Part shown: in pieces, positions 14,217-54,456 of the stretch
How the letters are laid out: each line of letters starts with the position of its first letter
Position numbering within the stretch: the first letter of the stretch is position 1
DNA from: Bispira polyomma
Lineage: Eukaryota
Direction: 5' to 3'
Assembly (NCBI GenBank): GCA_965649765.1
Contig: OZ287752.1
Span: 52,576,001-52,640,000, forward strand
Length of the DNA stretch: 64,000 nucleotides
Made by a program: the position numbers and the translations under genes
The notes under the pieces: model-generated
Databases searched by the model: none
Told to the model about the DNA's origin: nothing
What the model saw: only the letters and a program-made list of their open reading frames with translations

Positions 14217-14359
14217 NNNNNNNNNNNNNNNNNNNNNNNNNNNNNNNNNNNNNNNNNNNNNNNNNNNNNNNNNNNNNNNNNNNNNNNNNNNNNNNNNNNN
14301 NNNNNNNNNNNNNNNNNNNNNNNNNNNNNNNNNNNNNNNNNNNNNNNNNNNNNNNNNNN
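14217..14359. other. Assembly gap
   Basis: Run of N; hides the HRD catalytic-loop codons of gene B. Confidence 1.
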
Positions 14360-38886: not shown

Positions 38887-39043
38887 CCCACAAAAGAATT
38901 GTTTACCTGTCGATACACCACTTGATACACCAGTATAACTCCTGTTCTTAAGAAATTGCATTGGCTCTCTGTTGAACAGCGTTCAGTGTTTAAGACAGCT
39001 ACACTTGTTTATAAGTTTCTTCACACTGGATTTCCAAAGTATT
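38887..39043 (+). mobile_element. L2/CR1-clade LINE fragment, part 1
   Basis: SITPVLKKLHWLSVEQRSVFKTATLVYKFLHTGFPKY, a typical post-RT motif. Confidence 0.8.
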
Positions 39044-39501
39044 ATAAAAGTTACACCTGGGTTATGGGTGTGATAAGAGGGCATAAACTCACACAAATAC
39101 ATTGATGCCTGCTGGGTGTATGGTGGGGAAGGCCCAGATTAAGTATAGTTCCTAGCATCTGCGCCTTTTAGTGGAATCTAGGTGATTATCCTTACCCATC
39201 CATTGGAAAATGCTGAACTCCATGTGTTTTACAGAATGGTGCTTCTGTGTAAAGTGTCTTGTTTTTGGTTTCTGCATTAAGTTTTTTTGAAACTTCTTCC
39301 AGTAGAGATATGGTCTCACTGCTCAGTTGGATGACTGGAATTGGGGTGCCAGTAGCTGGAGTATTGAAAGCTGTGTGACTGTCCACTTCTAGGTGGTTGA
39401 TAGCAGTGCTAAGGGCAGTTTCACTCTCACTAATTTTGACCCAGTATAATTAAGAAAGATATGATGTGTGTGAGAGAGAGGTGTATTTGTCTTCTCCAAC
39501 A

Positions 39502-39576
39502 ATTTGCCTTATATATACCTTTATATCTTTGTATATATTTCGAAAATCTTATTGGATTATCTCATCAGAGGCTGAT
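39502..39576 (-). ncRNA. Type I hammerhead ribozyme, copy 1
   Basis: Same core and stems as 41354-41428, with one substitution in outer stem I. Confidence 0.85.
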
Positions 39577-39838
39577 AACTGCTGCTTTCTAAGCACGAAT
39601 CACATCAGGAAGAGCATTCCAAACAATGGGAGCATTAAAAGCAAAGCTGTGACCAAACTGTTTAACCGACTTTTGAGTAGATGGGTGGAACTTCAGAACA
39701 ACAAGGAAATTACTACCACTCTGACTATGTCTGGTATTGTAGGAACTACTGTAAGTGGAAAGATATGGGGCAAAATACTTTGGAAATCCAGAAAGATATG
39801 ATGTGTGTGAGAGAGAGGTGTATTTGTCTTCTCCAACA

Positions 39839-39913
39839 ATTTGCCTTATATATACCTTTATATCTTTGTATATATTTCGAAAATCTTATTGGATTATCTC
39901 ATCAGAGGCTAAT
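39839..39913 (-). ncRNA. Type I hammerhead ribozyme, copy 2
   Basis: Reverse complement of 41354-41428. Confidence 0.85.
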
Positions 39914-40402
39914 AACTGATTTTTGAATTTTCCCTTGAGGTACTAAAAGTGGCTCCACCTGGCTCCGGGGGAGCCTTGGTTTCCTCCGCCGGAGCCATAA
40001 ATTTTAAGGGGAGCCATTCCATTTATGGATTATTTTTGGGGGTAATATTGTAAGTCCATATTAGCCAAAAATAATCAAAAAATTAATTCAAAGAATTGTT
40101 AGGTGGTCATAATTCAGTACTTATGTGCCAATGCGTTCACATGTTATATATGTTCAGTTGCTGTAAAATAATGGGTTACCAAGTATGAATATTTATGGGG
40201 TTTATTGGTCCATAAATGTTTTTGGGTTGAAATTCAAGTATGATCAGTGGGTGGCATTACAGTTGTTATGGTATTGGTTAGATTTTATATTAAATGTGGA
40301 ATCCAGTATTTCTGGTGTCCATCAGGTAATATAATAATTTTTGACCAATAGTAATACCTCCTGAGTTTTTTAAGAAAACAGTCGGTATTTTGTCAGGGCT
40401 AT

Positions 40403-40562
40403 NNNNNNNNNNNNNNNNNNNNNNNNNNNNNNNNNNNNNNNNNNNNNNNNNNNNNNNNNNNNNNNNNNNNNNNNNNNNNNNNNNNNNNNNNNNNNNNNNN
40501 NNNNNNNNNNNNNNNNNNNNNNNNNNNNNNNNNNNNNNNNNNNNNNNNNNNNNNNNNNNNNN
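40403..40562. other. Assembly gap
   Basis: Run of N. Confidence 1.
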
Positions 40563-41353
40563 ACACATAATACTTAAGTACAGTATAGTCTATACTAATT
40601 TTTGATTAGTAGTAGAGTTCATCAGTGCTACTGATAATCTTCATAAACAGATTATATATATTTAGAATGTCTATAGTGGTGGGGTGATATCCCCGCACAA
40701 GGTATCCAAATAATCCATCAAATTAAATATTTCCCCACTTTACTTCAGTGGGAGACTACTCCTGATATGTCTGTTCAGGTTGTATTTTTTGGAATAAAGT
40801 TTATGGCAAATAGCACATGTAAACCACATTATTATTTATATATAGATGTTGTTGTAGTAAATTATTTTTAGTTTAAGAGTAATACCTCCAAACCGGAACA
40901 AAGGTAAATATAAATCAGCCAGTTTGTTATGTTGGAGATTGTAACCAGATAACTGTGATCAGGTAAGTGGTCATTGTTACATAAAATAGCCTCCATGTGG
41001 ACAACATTTTTGCCACCCACTGATCATACTTGAATTTCAACCCAAAAACATTTATGGACCAATAAACCCCATAAATATTCATACTTGGTAACCCATAATT
41101 TTACAGCAACTGAACATATATAACATGTGAACGCATTGGCACATAAGTACTGAATTATGACCACCTAACAATTCTTTGAATTAATTTTTTGATTATTTTT
41201 GGCTAATATGGACTTACAATATTACCCCCAAAAATAATCCATAAATGGAATGGCTCCCCTTAAAATTTATGGCTCCGGCGGAGGAAACCAAGGCTCCCCC
41301 GGAGCCAGGTGGAGCCACTTTTAGTACCTCAAGGGAAAATTCAAAAATCAGTT

Positions 41354-41428
41354 ATTAGCCTCTGATGAGATAATCCAATAAGATTTTCGAAATATATACA
41401 AAGATATAAAGGTATATATAAGGCAAAT
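41354..41428 (+). ncRNA. Type I hammerhead ribozyme, copy 3
   Basis: GCCT-CTGATGA-(GATAATC/CAATAA/GATTTTC)-GAAA-(TATATAC/12-nt loop/GTATATA)-TA-AGGC: complete core, stems I-III pair, AUA cleavage triplet at 41418-41420. Confidence 0.88.
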
Positions 41429-41475
41429 TGTTGGAGAAGACAAATACACCTCTCTCTCACACACATCATATCTTT

Positions 41476-41855
41476 CTGGATTTCCAAAGTATTTTGCCCC
41501 ATATCTTTCCACTTACAGTAGTTCCTACAATACTAGACATAGTCAGAGTGGTAGTAATTTCCTTGTTGTTCTGAAGTTCCACCCATCTACTCAAAAGTCG
41601 GTTAAACAGTTTGGTCACAGCTTTGCTTTTAATGCTCCCATTGTTTGGAATGCTCTTCCTGATGTGATTCGTGCTTAGAAAGCAGCTTAAAACCCACTTA
41701 TACACTAAATCATACCCACCTTAGTCTCAATCATCCCCCGGCACGCTCAGTGGTGCTGACCCTTTTCTGTCCCTTGATTTTGGAAATTGGATTTTTTTTT
41801 GTCTTTTGTGCTGGTGTGCCTTAGAGTCCCCTTTGTTAAACAGAGATTAAGCGCG
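41476..41855 (+). mobile_element. L2/CR1-clade LINE fragment, part 2 with 3' UTR
   Basis: GFPKYFAPYLSTY..FGHSFAFNAPIVWNALPDVIRA..RKQLKTHLYTKSYPP-stop; continues 38887-39043. Confidence 0.82.
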
Positions 41856-43660: not shown

Positions 43661-44276
43661 AATAATAACTTCCTTTCAATCAATATTCTTCTTCTATCCA
43701 CTAAAAACAATATATATATATATATATATTCCAATCCAAGACGTCCATCTGGTGGAAAAATTATGGAATTACAACAATCATTAAAATTATTTATGCCGAA
43801 CTTGATATTAAGGAAGAAATATTCAATAGAAATTAAAATTTTATTAAAAAAATAGTTTGACTGAATTATCGGAAAGTTATCCTGTAATTTATTTCCCTTC
43901 ATTATTGCATATTTTTGCCTATAAATATTCATCTTTCTTGTTATGTACATAGTAAATAAAATGGCTTATTTTCCACTAGTATAAAATAATAGATTTTATT
44001 TTGTTACTGAGAAAAATTTTCTATTTCATGTCTGACCATGTGCATAAACTACACTGCAGGGTGCAGTTTTTGTCCCGTTTTGCAACCTCTCCCCTCTGCA
44101 CAGGGTGTCTGAAAAAAGTCTTCAAAAAACCATTTAAAAAATCTCACAAAGTAGCTGCTGAGAGGCTTTAAAGAAGCATGCTACAACATGCATTAATTCG
44201 AAGTGATATCTGAGGCATATTTCAATATCGTATTTTAGAGGAAATTGATATAAAAAAACTATTAACTTGAAAAATC

Positions 44277-44628
44277 AGCACTCTGCACCCCTTTTAAAGG
44301 AAATCACTTTTACTCAATTAGTGTTAAAGAAATATTAGTAACATATTACACAGAAATGTATTTTAGAACTTATTATTGTCAGTTATAGTTCTAGTTGTAA
44401 GATATAAGAAAAACATTGTACGAACTACTTAAGTAAATATATCAGTTATATAAATAAGCACTCTACACCCCTTTTAAAGGAAATCACTTATACTTAGTTA
44501 GTGTTAAAGATATAGTAGTAACATATTACACAAAAATGTATTTCCGAAGTTATTATTGTCATTTATAGTTCTAGTTGTAAGACGAAGGAAAACATTGTAC
44601 TAACTACTTGAGTAAATATATCAGTTAT
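44277..44628. repeat. Tandem duplication, ~180-bp unit
   Basis: AGCACTCT.CACCCCTTTTAAAGGAAATCACTT starts at ~44277 and ~44457. Confidence 0.9.
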
Positions 44629-45011: not shown

Positions 45012-45396
45012 CTGATTTTGAGTAAAGAGCATTGTATCAATAAAACAAGGCTGTTTTTTGAAAATCACAGTATTTTACTGTATCAGCATATTTAATAGTG
45101 AATGAGAACACTAAATATGTATTACATAATAAATGGAATATAAAGTATATGATGGAAATAGGTTGGCCATATTTATATAATGTATCAGAATTGTGGTTTT
45201 CGAAAAAAAATTAAGATGGCCCAAATTTTTTTTTCATATTTAGATCCTATGTTTAAAAAAAATTAAGATGGCCCCAATTTCTTTTCATATTTAGACCCTA
45301 TTTAAAAAAAAAAATAAAATTTCTATTCCACATAATGAGTTAGTTTACATGACAATCTATAATATCAACACACTAGTACTGAAAATTTTGCCTTAC

Positions 45397-49581: not shown

Positions 49582-50115
49582 TGTTTGTAGATAGTTTAAT
49601 TGATTAACTCATTTATAAGAAATAATATGTGGCTTTTCCTTCACACGTCGGTTTGATGTTTTTATAGATATTATCGTACAAGCTGATGTTAAAACGTGGA
49701 AGCCTAAAGGCAGGGTAGTTCAAAAGTTTGTTTCGAGTCTTTGGTGTGTAGTGGGGCGTGCTGCATTTCTGTGTGATTTACAGGTTAACTGAAGTAGTGT
49801 TAGTTAGTATACATCTCGTTTACCATCTTGAGTGAGGGTAAATGGGCTGGTGGTACTAAGATATTCAACTTCAGGTTAATTGGTGATATCAAGGGTATAT
49901 CATTGTACTGGTTAGGAAATCAGTGGAATCTGTGGTATCAAGGGTATATCACTGTATTGGTTAGAAAGCCAATGTGTAGACAAGATTAGCTTAGCAGTTT
50001 ACTGAACTATAGTAGTAACTAGTAGTTGTAAACAGTGTTGTAGCTGTGGTCTGTTTGGTAGTTTGTGTAATTCAGGTAGTTTGGTCTGTGTCCTTTATTT
50101 GTGAAAAGTTTAAAA

Positions 50116-53100
50116 ATGGACAAACTAGTTGAAGTAGGTAAACAGATGGGTTTAGAAGGGCAGTCTTTACAGACTTTTGTGTTGGAACAGCAAGATAGGG
50201 AGAGGGAACAGCAAGATAGAGAGAGGGCAGAAAGAGTAGATAGAAGGGAACATGAGAAAGTACCTAAGGATGCAGAGTTAAGAGTTAAGGAGGCAGAGTT
50301 GGAGATAGCTAGACTTAATTCTACTTCCCAGGTTAGACCAGGTCAAGGTGTGGTCAGAGCCAGCTTCCCCAAACTTTCCCCCTTTGTTGAAAATAAGGAC
50401 GATATGGATTCCTTTCTATTTCGTTTTGAGAAGTATGCGGCCGCTCAAAGTCTAAAACCTGAAGATTGGGCAATGAGTCTTAGCGCGTTACTTTCAGGAA
50501 CAGCATTAGAAGTTTATCGTAGGCTAGGAAAAGAGGACAGTGACAGCTTTGATAAACTAAAAAAGGCACTTCTCAAGAGATATGAGCTTACTGAGGAAGG
50601 CTTTAGAGCAAAGTTTAGGACATCCAGAATAGAAAAAGGTGAGACCCCAACCCAGTTTGTTGATAGGTTAGCCAATTACCTTGAGAGGTGGATTGAATTT
50701 GGAGAAGTCTCCAAGAGTTTTGATAAGTTATCTGATCTCATGTTGAGAGAACAGTTTGTCTCCAATTGTAGTAAACCATTAGCTGTGTTCCTTAAAGAAA
50801 GAACTCCTAAAACTTCGAAGGAAATGGCTTACTTAGCAGAACAGTATGTTGAGGCCCATGGTGAACAAAACTGTCTCATAAAAGAGTCAACTCCAGTAAA
50901 ACGCGTATCTAATGATAGGGATAGTTTAAGGTTTGTCTCCAAGGGGAAAACAAGACCCAATGTCTTTGACAAGATCTGTTACAGATGTGGTAAGAAGGGT
51001 CATATGAAGAGAGATTGTAGAGTTAAGATCCAAACTGCTGGTGCAGTTAAACAAAGCTATGGGGCTAGTTCAGAATCTGAACAGCAGGAAACGGGAGCAA
51101 CTTGTATCATGCGTTTGTTGTCTGAGAGTATAACAGGTGATCAATTGGAACTCGCTTCAGGTAAGTCCATTACTATAGTTAGTGCGTGTGAGCAAAGCAT
51201 TGGTTAAAAAAACTACAACTTACCAGTATTTAAGGGTGTAGTGAGTGATGTGACTGTAGATACTTTGAGGGATAGTGGTTGTACCGGTGTTGTGGTGCAA
51301 TCAAGCCTTGTGAAACCAGAACAGTTTACAGGGAAGGTCTTTTTATGTGTACTTATTGACGGGACTGTGAGGAAGTTTCCCATTGCCAAAGTACATATAG
51401 ACACTCCTTTCTATGTAGGTGAAGTTGAGGCTATGATTATGGAGAAACCCATCTACCCGCTAGTGTTGGGAAATATACCTGGTATTAGAGATGTCAATGA
51501 TCCAAACCCTGATTGGTATAGTGCTTCTGAGGAGGTGGCAACTAATACTGAAAAGGTAGCAGTAATGACCAGGGCCCAAACTGAAAGGGAGAAAAAACCC
51601 ATAGGTCCATTAAAGGTTCCATCTGAGATTGACTTAGGTTTAACATCTGAGGAATTTAAACAAGAGCAGTTGAATGATTCAAGTCTTAGTTCTGTGTGGG
51701 ATTTAGCGGCAGAAAACAAATCTGTAAAGATAAGGGGTGGTAACCAAGTAAACTATTCAGTCCAAAAGGGTTTCTTATATCGAGAATTTCATCCCAGAAA
51801 TAAACAGAAACCTGTGAAACAACTTCTAGTGCCCCAAAGGTTAAGAACTAAGATACTTAAATTGGCTCATGAAACTCTGATGAGTGGTCATTTAGGTATG
51901 AAGAAAACCTTAGACAGAATTATGTGTAGTTTCTTCTGGCCAGGCTTACAAAGTGATGCTAATTTGTTCTGTAGATCTTGTGATCTATGTCAGAGAACCA
52001 CCCCAAAGGGCAGGGTATCCCCCGTTCCCTTAAATAAAATGCCACTTATTGACACACCGTTTCAAAGGGTAGCAATAGATTTGGTTGGTCCATTTACCCC
52101 AGTCACTGAGCGTGGTCATCGCTATATACTTACCATGGTTGACTATGCTATTAGGTACCCGGAAGCCGTTGCTCTTCCCACCATAGAGACCGAACGTGTT
52201 GCAGAAGGCCTTATAGAAATGTTTTCCAGAGTGGGAATACCAAGTGAGATCTTGAGTGACAGAGGTTCTCAGTTTACCTCACAGTTGATGCAGGAGGTGA
52301 ATAGACTACTTAGTGTTAAGCAATTGCTTACTACTCCTTACCACCCACAATGCAACGGTCTTGTGGAAAAGTTCCATTTTGTGTTGAAATCTATGTTGCG
52401 GAAATTATGTTCTGAGCGACCTCGGGATTGGGATAGGTATCTCCCTGCTGTACTTTTTGCATATAGAGAGGTTCCTCAAGCTAGTACAGGTTTTGCCCCG
52501 TTTGAACTCTTATATGGAAGAACGGTGAGAGGTCCTATGCGTATCCTTAAAGAGTTATGGTCAGGTGAGTTTGACTCAGATGAAACCAAAACCACATATC
52601 AGTACATAGTGGATTTAAGAGAAAGGTTGGAAAAAACTTGTAAGCTAGCTCAAAGTCAATTAGAGAACGCTCAGCTGAAAGGTAAGTATCACCATGATAA
52701 GAGAAGCAAGAAACGTAAGTTTGAGGTGAAGGACAAAGTGTTATTGTTGTTGCCCACTGAATCAAACAAGCTTTTAGTGAAATGGCAAGGTCCCTATGAA
52801 GTAGTTGAAGCCATTGGTGATGACTATCGAGTCCAGGTTAAGGGCAAGGTAAAAATCTACCATGCAAACCTATTAAAAAAATATCTTCAGCTTCCAAGTA
52901 ACCAAGGTACTAGTAGTGCGATTAGCGTAGTTGCTGAATCATCACTTTTGCAGGTTGTATCTATGGCTGTTATTGAGTCTCAAACAGAAGTGGGAACCGT
53001 CGACGATGATAAGCTGATACATTTCAACTGTCTTGAGCAAACCGAAACATACAAAGATGTAATTGTGAATCCTGATTTATCAGAGGGTCAAGAACAACAA

Positions 53101-54456
53101 GTTTTTAATTTACTTCATGAGTTTAGGGACATATTCTCTGATCTTCCAGGTTCCACCAATTTAGTTGAACATGAGATAGAGTTGGTGAGTGATGAACCAG
53201 TCAGGTTGAAACCATACCCAGTACCATACCACATGCAAAGTGTTGTAGACAATGAAGTTGAAAAGATGCTAAGGATGAATGTTATCAAACCTTGCAATTC
53301 CCCATACGCATCTCCAATTGTTCTAGTTAGGAAAGCTGATGGAACACTCCGTTTCTGCACAGATTATCGGAAGCTCAACCGTTTAACTGTATTTTCCACA
53401 GAACCTATGGTGCAGGCAGATCAGATATTTTGCAAACTAAAAGACAGCAAATGGGTAAGCAAATGTGACATGTCAAAAGGATACTGGCAAATCGCTGTTG
53501 CTAAGTCAAGTCAAGACAAGACTTGCTTTGTAACTCCAGAAGGTTCATACTGTTATCTGAGAATGCCTTTTGGTCTGGTAAATTCAGCAGCCACTTTTAA
53601 CTGGATGATGAGAATCCTTTTGAAGGGATTAAGTAAGTCGGAGAGCTATATAGATGATACAGTGACTCATACTATAGAGTGGGAGGAGCATTTGATTGAA
53701 CTGAGGAAGTTGTTTGAAAGAGTTAGATCTGCAGGATTGACGATGAAACCAACAAAGTGCAAGTTAGGGTTTAGGACGGTAGATTTTCTAGGGCACATTG
53801 TAGGTGAAGGAGAAATCAGTCCCAATCCTGAGAAATTATTTGACATTCAGCAGGCCCCAAGACCTGAGACCAAGAAACAAGTGAGAAGTTTCCTAGGGTT
53901 AATAGGCTTCTATTCAAAGTTTATACCAAATTATAGCACTGTTGCGGCTCCATTAACTGACTTAACTAAAAGAGGTTGCCCAAATAAGGTAGTGTGGGGT
54001 GAAGTCCAAGAAAGAGCATTTAGTGCATTGAAGAAAGTGTTAAGTTGTAATCCTATCCTGAGACTTCCTGATTTGACAAAGGGATTTGTTCTCCAAACAG
54101 ATTCATCTGAAGTAGGTATTGGTGCAATGCTGATACAAGACTGTGATGGTCAAGGGTTTCCTGTGGCTTATGCCAGTAAAAAGTTAACCAAAAGTGAACT
54201 GAATTACTCTGTAATTGAAAAAGAATGTTTGGCTTTGGTTTGGGCAGTCAGAAAATTTCATGTGTACTTGTACGGCAAATAATTCCTTCTGGAAACCGAT
54301 CATCAACCTCTTGTATATTTAAGGAAGTCAAAAATGGAAAATGGTCGGCTTATGAGATGGGCACTGGCTTTGCAACCATACCAGTTTAGGATCAAAGCAA
54401 TAAAAGGTTCACAAAATGTGGGTGCGGATTATCTCAGTAGGATATCATGTATTTGA
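50116..54456 (+). pseudogene. Single-frame gag-pol interrupted by two TAA stops (51205-51207 and 54280-54282)
   Basis: SCAN-like gag, CYRCGKKGHMKRDC knuckle, LRDSGC protease, HHCC plus DDE integrase, GPY motif, YIDD RT, RNase H ending NVGADYLSR; all in one frame. Confidence 0.95.

What the first reader, a model, noticed from the sequence alone, without database searches (positions are those of the whole stretch)
39502..41428. Three intact type I hammerhead ribozymes, two in tandem defining a 337-nt retrozyme-like unit
Seen: complete core CUGAUGA/GAAA/UH with stem I GCCU:AGGC, a 7-position stem II with one U-U mismatch and CAAUAA loop, and stem III UAUAUAC:GUAUAUA plus the core A-U pair; cleavage predicted after 41420 (+) and after 39847 and 39510 (-). 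The two minus-strand sites are 337 nt apart. Established: tandem type I hammerheads in animals (non-LTR retrozymes, Penelope pseudo-LTRs) release monomers of a few hundred nt that can circularise. Unusual here: ~210 nt of the monomer is captured antisense LINE sequence, which may show how a new retrozyme is born. The minus-strand copies also lie ~5 kb downstream of gene C on its own strand.
Basis: partly seen in the sequence, partly recalled or inferred. Interest (0 to 1): 0.85.

Follow-up and report, generated by a model that had tools for sequence, protein, structure and literature searches.

The report
Penelope-element hammerhead ribozymes, locally duplicated
The three self-cutting RNA motifs are real, but they belong to one ordinary two-armed insertion of an abundant Penelope-like jumping element, and the 337-base "unit" is a one-off local duplication that copied the neighbouring LINE flank, not a new mobile ribozyme element.

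Summary
Observation confirmed. A hammerhead descriptor finds exactly three type I motifs in the window. Their cuts fall after 41420 (+), 39847 (-) and 39510 (-); 0.05 are expected by chance.

Interpretation only partly supported. The motif lies in a 134-nt segment (R) of a young, protein-less ~1.7-kb derivative of a Penelope-like element (PLE). The whole 39037-41482 block is one PLE-style insertion into a LINE copy, with an 18-bp target duplication and two head-to-head arms ending at the family's two fixed end points.

The 203-nt spacer is not captured cargo. It is an inverted copy of the right-hand flanking LINE and shares its private deletion. It is LINE-sense, not antisense, on the ribozyme strand. 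Its junction with R is unique in the genome, and the 337-nt RNA folds no better than shuffles.

New support for activity: the 5' ends of at least 7 independent family copies fall exactly at the predicted cut.

Rfam models do not recognise the motif, and no read or RNA data could be obtained.

This scan had already noted the same stretch (s1-691840) and similar PLE insertions elsewhere in this genome. Known kind; modest interest.

The parts
38908..39043 (+). Left part of the target LINE copy (LINE sense on +). It ends with target-site duplication copy 1, CTGGATTTCCAAAGTATT, at 39026-39043.
   Evidence: blastn to LINE copy L003 positions 535->401; junction read; RVT_1 on the LINE ORFs
39037..39447 (-). 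X tail of the long arm (X 1-419). Its outer end is the family's 'long' fixed 3' end.
   Evidence: 97% to the family unit; the genome search places X 1-419 here; end-point classes
39448..39581 (-). R, downstream copy. Hammerhead at 39572-39506, cut after 39510. Differs from the other two R copies at one internal base.
39582..39784 (-). Spacer S: an inverted copy of the right flank LINE (41483-41686). It includes the target-duplication sequence and a private ~19-nt deletion, and is LINE-sense on this strand.
39785..39918 (-). R, upstream copy. Hammerhead at 39909-39843, cut after 39847. Identical to the right-arm R.
39919..40402 (-). U segment of the long arm. It carries a private 35-nt deletion at 40255/40256 relative to all sampled family copies and to the right arm.
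40403..40562 (.). Assembly gap inside the long arm. Its flanks are collinear in the family unit (positions 1187 and 1108).
40563..40982 (-). V segment of the long arm. It is a remnant of the family's C2H2 zinc-finger gene with a 655-nt internal deletion. Its inner end meets the short arm head to head.
40979..41348 (+). Short inverted arm, U part, 5'-truncated at unit position ~1337-1343.
41349..41482 (+). R of the short arm. Hammerhead at 41358-41424, cut after 41420. The arm ends at the family's 'short' fixed end (R134).
41476..41854 (+). Right part of the target LINE copy. It begins with target-site duplication copy 2 (41476-41493). Its first 203 nt after R are the source of S.

Best explanation
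The three hammerheads are copies of one 67-nt type I hammerhead. It lies in a 134-nt segment (R) of a very young, high-copy, protein-less ~1.7-kb deletion derivative of a Penelope-like retroelement (PLE). The longer members of this family carry a C2H2 zinc-finger gene.

Window 39037-41482 is a single insertion of this element into a LINE copy, with an 18-bp target-site duplication. It was laid down in the usual PLE manner as two head-to-head, 5'-truncated arms. The long arm is on the minus strand (V-U-R-X) and ends at X~419. The short arm is on the plus strand (U-R) and ends at R134.

The third hammerhead exists because a block was copied in inverted orientation into the long arm. The block is the right arm plus 203 nt of its flanking LINE (41011-41686). 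The copy gives U-R-S-R-X, and hence a 337-bp R+S period. I infer a replicative template switch between the inverted arms, joined at 1-2 nt microhomologies. It happened either while the insertion intermediate was resolved or later, during break repair or replication.

Function (inferred): in element RNA the hammerhead cuts after A17, which is R position 72. The cut sets the 5' end of the RNA that is later reverse-transcribed. At this locus a minus-strand transcript would be cut twice and release a 337-nt RNA. Nothing shows that this RNA is made, circularised or mobile.
For: - Motif and coordinates.
- Family size: 149 near-exact cores against 0 for the control; at least 422 R candidates at 99-100% identity; at least 182 U and at least 894 X candidates.
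- Retroelement behaviour: variable 5' truncation and tandem R-X-V-U-R arrays of 1706-1742 bp. Among the first 100 listed cores there are 12 outward-facing inverted pairs and no inward-facing pair.
- Two fixed 3' ends, at R134 and at X~415-424. Most sampled inverted pairs with both ends held take one of each; two loci end the long arm near X194-197 and one pairs an X end with a tandem array.
- PLE link: long members have a 279-aa ORF with a weak C2H2 hit, intact in at least 20 copies. Paralogues of this ORF at 50-55% identity lie ~440 nt downstream of GIY-YIG matches inside open frames of up to 810-839 aa, on the same strand, at more than 20 loci.
- PLE literature describes pseudo-LTR tandems, an adjacent inverted 5'-truncated copy and hammerheads near the 3' end (PMC8557442, PMC4209133).
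- Insertion map and target duplication.
- S is a copy of the flank. The R-to-S junction is identical to the R-to-flank junction. S and the flank share a deletion absent from the four other LINE copies where that site could be read, and all 38 other listed matches stop at that point. The upstream R equals the right-arm R (0/141 differences), and the arms differ at 2 of 676 positions.
- The S-to-R junction is unique in the genome.
- In vivo cutting: of 12 copies whose similarity ends within 12 nt upstream of the cut, 7 end exactly at the cut, 2 more are ambiguous by one base, and 3 lie elsewhere (P = 1.5e-5). At most 1 truncation lies in the 12 positions further upstream. Held loci L066 and L042 confirm arms that start at the first base after the cut.
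Against: - No Rfam hammerhead model scores the motif, even on a 96-nt piece.
- All copies are near-identical, so there is no covariation support for the helices.
- No RT/GIY-YIG master copy of this exact subfamily was seen. The PLE assignment rests on architecture and on paralogous zinc-finger genes.
The tandem therefore rests on the assembly alone, next to a gap and inside a palindrome, which is a setting known to trouble assemblers.
- The mechanism and timing of the duplication cannot be told from the sequence.
- The 35-nt deletion at 40255/40256 may be a second junction of the copied block or an unrelated event.
Confidence: 0.8

Rival explanations
1. Nascent or active non-LTR retrozyme. The R-S-R dimer is transcribed and cut at both hammerheads. 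The 337-nt RNA, with its LINE-derived cargo, is circularised and can be copied back into DNA.
For: Two intact, equally oriented hammerheads stand 337 nt apart. Size and GC (37%) lie within the published retrozyme range of 150-450 bp and under 45% GC (PMC7229834). The family's hammerhead appears to cut in vivo. Retrozymes are thought to derive from PLE pseudo-LTRs (preprint 10.64898/2026.07.22.740005). A second short hammerhead tandem of 314 nt exists at L054.
Against: The diagnostic junction is unique in 1.04 Gb and no other R-S copy exists. There is only one full monomer. The spacer is a copy of the local flank. The monomer folds worse than shuffles (z = +1.6). No expression data are available.
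Confidence: 0.07
2. The tandem is an assembly artefact. The true long arm is the canonical V-U-R-X, and the extra S-R block is a mis-joined copy of the other arm in a palindromic, high-copy repeat beside a gap.
For: An N gap lies inside the same arm. The block is almost identical to the other arm plus flank (2/676 differences). PLE tandem and inverted structures are reported to disturb assemblies (PMC8557442).
Against: The S-to-R junction has only about 1 nt of microhomology. A graph collapse on shared words therefore cannot create it; it needs reads that contain it. Many other loci of the family are assembled cleanly with flanks. The downstream R differs from the other two by one base.
Confidence: 0.1
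3. The motif is a hammerhead look-alike without catalytic activity. It would be a fossil or a chance fit carried by an AT-rich repeat.
For: No Rfam hit. Stem I has only 4 bp, stem III is AU-only and stem II has a U-U mismatch. Folding energy is not better than shuffles. Metazoan PLE hammerheads cleave poorly in vitro (PMC4209133).
Against: Every invariant core position is present, against 0.05 hits per window by chance. The 5' ends of independent copies pile up at exactly the predicted scissile bond.
Confidence: 0.03

Closest known systems
Hammerheads in the pseudo-LTRs of Penelope-like elements (Cervera & de la Pena 2014, PMC4209133)
   Same: Type I motif near the 3' end of a PLE-type element. 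It has the long helix II (7 positions) and short helix I (4 bp) described for metazoan PLE 'min-HHRs'. It occurs in tandem and in nearby opposite-strand pairs, with more than a hundred near-identical copies, as in D. virilis.
   Different: Metazoan PLE min-HHRs have no helix III, or only a 1-2 bp palindromic one, and are thought to act as dimers. This motif has a stable 8-bp helix III with a 12-nt loop, like the monomer-active fungal and protist PLE variants. The copy here sits on a protein-less derivative.
PLE insertion architecture: partial tandems plus an adjacent inverted 5'-truncated copy (Craig et al. 2021, PMC8557442)
   Same: Head-to-head arms, 5' truncation, target duplication, tandem arrays elsewhere in the genome, and assembly trouble at such sites.
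   Different: An extra block copied from the other arm plus 203 nt of flank sits inside the long arm. That paper does not describe the two fixed arm end points (R134 and X~419).
Metazoan non-LTR retrozymes (Cervera & de la Pena 2020, PMC7229834; Li et al. 2026 preprint 10.64898/2026.07.22.740005)
   Same: Type I hammerheads in direct repeats of a few hundred bp, low GC, and derivation from PLE terminal sequences.
   Different: There is a single monomer bounded by two ribozymes at a single locus. The spacer is a copy of the local flank. There is no family, no evidence of RNA or circles, and no stable RNA fold.

Membership tests
Hammerhead ribozyme, type I | Invariant core C3-U4-G5-A6-N7-G8-A9, G12-A13-A14, the A15.1-U16.1 pair, and H17 not G | tested here: met
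   All are present in the three copies; H17 = A, triplet AUA
Hammerhead ribozyme, type I | Three helices around the core, with helices II and III closed by loops and helix I open | tested here: met
   Helix I 4 bp, helix II 6 pairs plus one U-U, helix III 8 bp; the minimum-free-energy fold of 81 nt reproduces the junction
Hammerhead ribozyme, type I | Recognised by the curated covariance models (Rfam Hammerhead_1 and relatives) | tested here: not met
   No hit at gathering score, nor at E<=10 on 3 kb, nor on 96 nt. The genome-wide RF00163 search was uninformative because only 73 of 99183 candidates were scored. A likely cause, which I infer, is the long helices II and III and the 12-nt loop against a 45-position model.
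Hammerhead ribozyme, type I | Site-specific self-cleavage | tested here: inconclusive
   Indirect only. Of 12 nearby 5' boundaries of family copies, 7 (plus 2 ambiguous) fall exactly at the predicted bond. No biochemical or RNA-end data.
Hammerhead ribozyme, type I | Helices supported by compensatory changes among relatives | tested here: inconclusive
   55 of 63 held copies are identical and the variants are single changes.
Penelope-like element (PLE) | ORF with PLE-type RT and a GIY-YIG endonuclease | tested here: not met
   The unit has no such ORF. Only paralogous zinc-finger genes (50-55% identity) lie beside GIY-YIG ORFs elsewhere. It is therefore filed as a non-autonomous derivative, not as an autonomous PLE.
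Penelope-like element (PLE) | Pseudo-LTR tandems and/or an adjacent inverted 5'-truncated copy, variable 5' truncation, target duplication | tested here: met
Penelope-like element (PLE) | Hammerhead in the terminal repeat near the 3' end | tested here: met
   The cut lies 62 nt before the short end and ~481 nt before the long end
Non-LTR retrozyme | Tandem repeats of 150-450 bp, each with a type I hammerhead | tested here: met
   Only at the minimum: two ribozymes bound one 337-bp monomer
Non-LTR retrozyme | A repeat family with many copies or arrays in the genome | tested here: not met
   The S-to-R junction occurs once with up to 3 mismatches; no other R-S locus
Non-LTR retrozyme | Expressed as monomeric linear and circular RNA | not testable with these tools

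The most novel reading that the evidence does not exclude
The R-S-R block may be a caught-in-the-act proto-retrozyme. A template switch between the two arms of a fresh PLE insertion would have placed two active hammerheads around unrelated (LINE) sequence. A minus-strand transcript would then yield a 337-nt RNA with 5'-OH and cyclic-phosphate ends that the cell can circularise. This would show directly how non-LTR retrozymes arise from PLE termini and how they could pick up foreign sequence.
Probability: 0.08. Interest if true: 0.7.

Novelty: new member of a known kind. Interest (0 to 1): 0.3.

Why it matters
Mostly this is a clean-up. A finding scored 0.85 turns out to be a normal insertion of a known class of retroelement with a private rearrangement.

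Two points have some value.

First, the pile-up of 5' ends of retrotransposed copies at the exact predicted scissile bond is genomic evidence that a metazoan PLE hammerhead cuts its RNA in vivo. The role of these ribozymes is still called unclear, and their in vitro activity is reported as low. This hammerhead has a stable helix III and should be able to act as a monomer, so it is a good candidate for biochemical work.

Second, short two-hammerhead units arise repeatedly by rearrangement at insertions of this family (this locus at 337 bp and L054 at 314 bp). That is the raw material expected if animal retrozymes are born from PLE termini, as a 2026 preprint argues from phylogeny.

Tried and rejected
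- Rfam scans at three scales found no hammerhead family. The genome-wide RF00163 search scored too few candidates to mean anything.
- A first hammerhead descriptor that allowed no mismatch in helix II found nothing. It was corrected to allow one internal mismatch.
- A relaxed descriptor found no other hammerhead type in the window or in the held loci; the only extra window hits (51523-51639) fall within the chance expectation of 0.38 per window.
- ORFs of the unit, including a 131-aa ORF in the X tail, gave only sub-threshold Pfam noise.
- The 111-aa ORF across R-S-R on the plus strand has no family.
- 'Terminal inverted repeat DNA transposon or foldback element' was considered for the palindrome. 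I rejected it because of variable 5' truncation, tandem arrays and two fixed 3' ends.
- 'S is a normal 5'-truncated LINE insertion with a 134-bp target duplication' was rejected. S is an internal LINE piece, 185-418 nt from the LINE 3' end, and carries the flank's private deletion.
The upstream region of long family members and the hammerheads of diverged subfamilies therefore stayed unread.

Full report
**1. Observation**

The plus strand at 41358-41424 reads GCCU / CUGAUGA / G-AUAAUC-CAAUAA-GAUUUU-C / GAAA / UAUAUAC-(12 nt)-GUAUAUA / UA / AGGC. The same 67 nt lie on the minus strand at 39909-39843 and 39572-39506.

A descriptor written for type I hammerheads required:
- the core CUGANGA ... 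GAAA ... UH;
- helix I of at least 4 bp;
- helix II of at least 4 pairs with one mismatch allowed;
- helix III of at least 3 pairs.

It finds exactly these three sites in the 64-kb window. It finds 0.05 sites per shuffled window.

The 81-nt context folds into the three-way junction as its minimum-free-energy structure. The energy is not better than shuffles.

Rfam does not recognise the motif at any threshold or scale. I attribute this to the long helices II and III and the 12-nt loop III, measured against a 45-position model. That attribution is an inference, and the failed test is recorded as such.

**2. The gap**

The N run at 40403-40562 lies between family-unit positions 1187 (at 40402) and 1108 (at 40563). 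Both sides are on the same strand and in order. The two sides are therefore collinear parts of one element arm. The N run spans 160 positions where the unit has 78. It touches neither a ribozyme nor the 337-nt unit.

**3. What the repeat is**

The genome has 1.04 Gb in 75 records.

The 134-nt repeat R that carries the ribozyme has at least 422 candidates at 99-100% identity. The 38-nt ribozyme core has 149 matches against 0 for the reversed control.

R is flanked upstream by U and V and downstream by X. Tandem arrays R-X-V-U-R with periods of 1706 and 1742 bp exist.

Copies are 5'-truncated at many different points. Their 3' ends fall mainly in two classes, plus a smaller one:
- R134, which lies 62 nt after the cut;
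- X~415-424, which lies ~481 nt after the cut;
- X~194-197, in five sampled arms from four loci.

Among the first 100 listed cores there are 12 inverted pairs within 2.5 kb. All face outward, so the 5' ends meet in the middle. In most sampled pairs with both ends held, one arm ends at each of the two main fixed points. In two loci the long arm ends near X194-197, and in one an X-end arm faces a tandem array. Earlier follow-ups of this scan reported the two-end pattern for other PLE families of this genome (s1-670654, s1-581971, s1-680847), and I reproduced it here.

The unit has no convincing ORF. Longer members carry 655 nt more inside V. This completes a 279-aa ORF with a weak C2H2 hit, which is intact in at least 20 copies at 91-100% identity. 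Paralogues of that ORF at 50-55% identity lie about 440 nt downstream of GIY-YIG matches, on the same strand, at more than 20 loci. Those matches sit inside open frames of up to 810-839 aa.

The following features match the published description of Penelope-like elements (PMC8557442, PMC4209133):
- partial tandems;
- an adjacent inverted 5'-truncated copy;
- a hammerhead near the 3' end;
- a target duplication.

I therefore file the family as a non-autonomous, gutted PLE derivative. An RT/GIY-YIG master of this exact subfamily was not seen.

**4. The locus**

Mapping the unit and a LINE copy onto the window and reading the junctions gives the following layout on the plus strand:
- LINE (its positions 535->401) at 38908-39043;
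- X at 39037-39447 (minus sense);
- R at 39448-39581;
- S at 39582-39784;
- R at 39785-39918;
- U at 39919-40402;
- the gap;
- V at 40563-40982;
- then, head to head, U (from unit position ~1340) and R at 40979-41482 (plus sense);
- LINE (418->26) at 41476-41854.

The same 18 nt, CTGGATTTCCAAAGTATT, stand at 39026-39043 and at 41476-41493. This is one insertion into one LINE copy, with a target-site duplication. Its long arm ends at X419 and its short arm at R134, as usual for the family.

**5. The 337-nt unit**

S is an internal piece of an abundant LINE: 934 candidates at 98% identity, RVT_1 on its ORFs, and a sharp 3' end with variable 5' truncation.

It is not a fresh capture from elsewhere.
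- The R-to-S junction on the left equals the R-to-flank junction on the right, including the target duplication.
- S and the right flank share a ~19-nt deletion. It is absent from the four other LINE copies where that site could be read, and all 38 other listed matches stop at that point.
- The upstream R is identical to the right-arm R over 141 nt. The downstream R differs by one base.
- The two arms (39582-40256 and 41011-41686) differ at 2 of 676 positions.

So a block consisting of the right arm plus 203 nt of its flank was copied, inverted, into the long arm.

The outer junction (S end to R start) has about 1 nt of microhomology. At the inner edge of the block the long arm has a private 35-nt deletion with 2 nt of microhomology. 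The right arm and all sampled copies lack this deletion. It may be the second junction of the copied block.

I infer a replicative template switch between the inverted arms. It could have occurred during resolution of the insertion intermediate or later, in break repair or replication. The sequence cannot tell which.

On the ribozyme strand S is LINE-sense, not antisense. The LINE's RT ORFs are on the strand of L003 that corresponds to the window's minus strand at S.

**6. Is it a retrozyme?**

Size (337 bp) and GC (37%) fit the published range (PMC7229834). Against this:
- the S-to-R junction occurs once in the genome with up to 3 mismatches;
- no other locus joins R to S;
- there is only one monomer;
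- the 337-nt RNA folds worse than its shuffles (z = +1.6).

A second short tandem exists at L054:2021-2468, with 314 nt between the R copies. It is made wholly of element sequence. Such dimers therefore arise repeatedly as by-products of this family's insertions.

**7. Does the ribozyme work?**

Direct proof is lacking, but the genome keeps a footprint.

I searched for copies whose similarity to the family stops within 12 nt upstream of the predicted cut. The 12 hits break down as follows:
- 7 lose similarity exactly at the scissile bond;
- 2 more are ambiguous by one base;
- 3 end at -3, -4 and -9.

For a pre-named position the probability is 1.5e-5.

The 12 positions further upstream hold at most one truncation among five variants. 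The 12 positions downstream hold about ten junctions. Most of these are palindromic head-to-head joins centred 4-9 nt after the cut, as expected from snap-back of a cDNA that had reached an RNA 5' end there.

In held loci, the arm in L066 begins at the first base after the cut, and the arm in L042/L067 begins at the cut to within one base.

The simplest reading is that the template RNAs had been cleaved at the predicted site in vivo. An earlier follow-up (s1-680847) noted the same for another family.

**8. Comparison with known systems**

Helix I (4 bp) and helix II (7 positions) match the metazoan PLE 'min-HHR' architecture. The stable 8-bp helix III does not. It resembles the monomer-active PLE hammerheads of fungi and protists (PMC4209133).

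A 2026 preprint (10.64898/2026.07.22.740005) already proposes that animal retrozymes derive from PLE termini.

The finding is thus a new member of a known kind with a private rearrangement. This scan had already flagged the same stretch with essentially my reading (s1-691840) and many PLE insertions elsewhere in this genome.

**9. Verdict**

Observation confirmed; interpretation partly supported; novelty low to moderate; interest 0.3.

The most novel reading still open is that this dimer is a proto-retrozyme that yields a 337-nt circle. I put that at about 8%.

Noticed in passing
L054:2021-2468 (G000:C3:90774320-90774767): A second short tandem of the same hammerhead, with R copies 314 nt apart. 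The spacer is made only of element pieces (X1-44, U181-270, U440-484). Short two-ribozyme units therefore arise more than once in this family.
   Followed up: partly
G000 places listed; held examples L066:3021-3082 and L042:334-396: The 5' boundaries of retrotransposed copies pile up exactly at the predicted hammerhead cut. Several palindromic head-to-head junctions lie 4-9 nt after it (for example C6:9136490-9136543 and C14:14044261-14044314), which suggests snap-back at the end of a cleaved RNA.
   Followed up: partly
L047:3-794 (+); also L055:1-792 and L036:711-1502 (-): Long members of the family carry a 279-aa ORF with a weak C2H2 zinc-finger hit, intact in at least 20 copies. Paralogues at 50-55% identity lie ~440 nt downstream of GIY-YIG/RT ORFs elsewhere in the genome. 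The window's copy has a 655-nt deletion inside this gene.
   Followed up: partly
held loci L031-L075: The family has two main alternative fixed 3' ends, R134 and X~415-424, and a smaller class near X194-197. Most sampled inverted pairs with both ends held use one of each main end, and single copies can end at either.
   Followed up: partly
L072:8554-8946 (-); equivalent in window about 39055-39447 (-): A 131-aa open frame starts just after R in the X tail of the element. It has no Pfam family beyond sub-threshold noise (SNAD4, E = 0.045).
   Followed up: partly
window 50101-54282 (+): A retrotransposon with a gag-like ORF (SCAN, zinc knuckle) and a 1013-aa pol ORF. In pol the integrase domains (residues 197-369) precede RT (696-854) and RNase H (919-1013).
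   Followed up: no
window 44255-44628 and 45204-45305: Two short tandem repeats, with a ~180-nt unit (85-93% identity) and a 51-nt unit (71% identity), a few kb from the insertion.
   Followed up: no
window 14217-14359: A second assembly gap of 143 N. Gap lengths vary, so they are estimates.
   Followed up: no
G000:C1:40888403, C3:235390, C9:40697900, C15:233291: A diverged subfamily reads TGGCATATTG instead of AGGCAAATTG just after the cut. Position 1.1 would then be U. Its hammerhead could test covariation in helix I.
   Followed up: no
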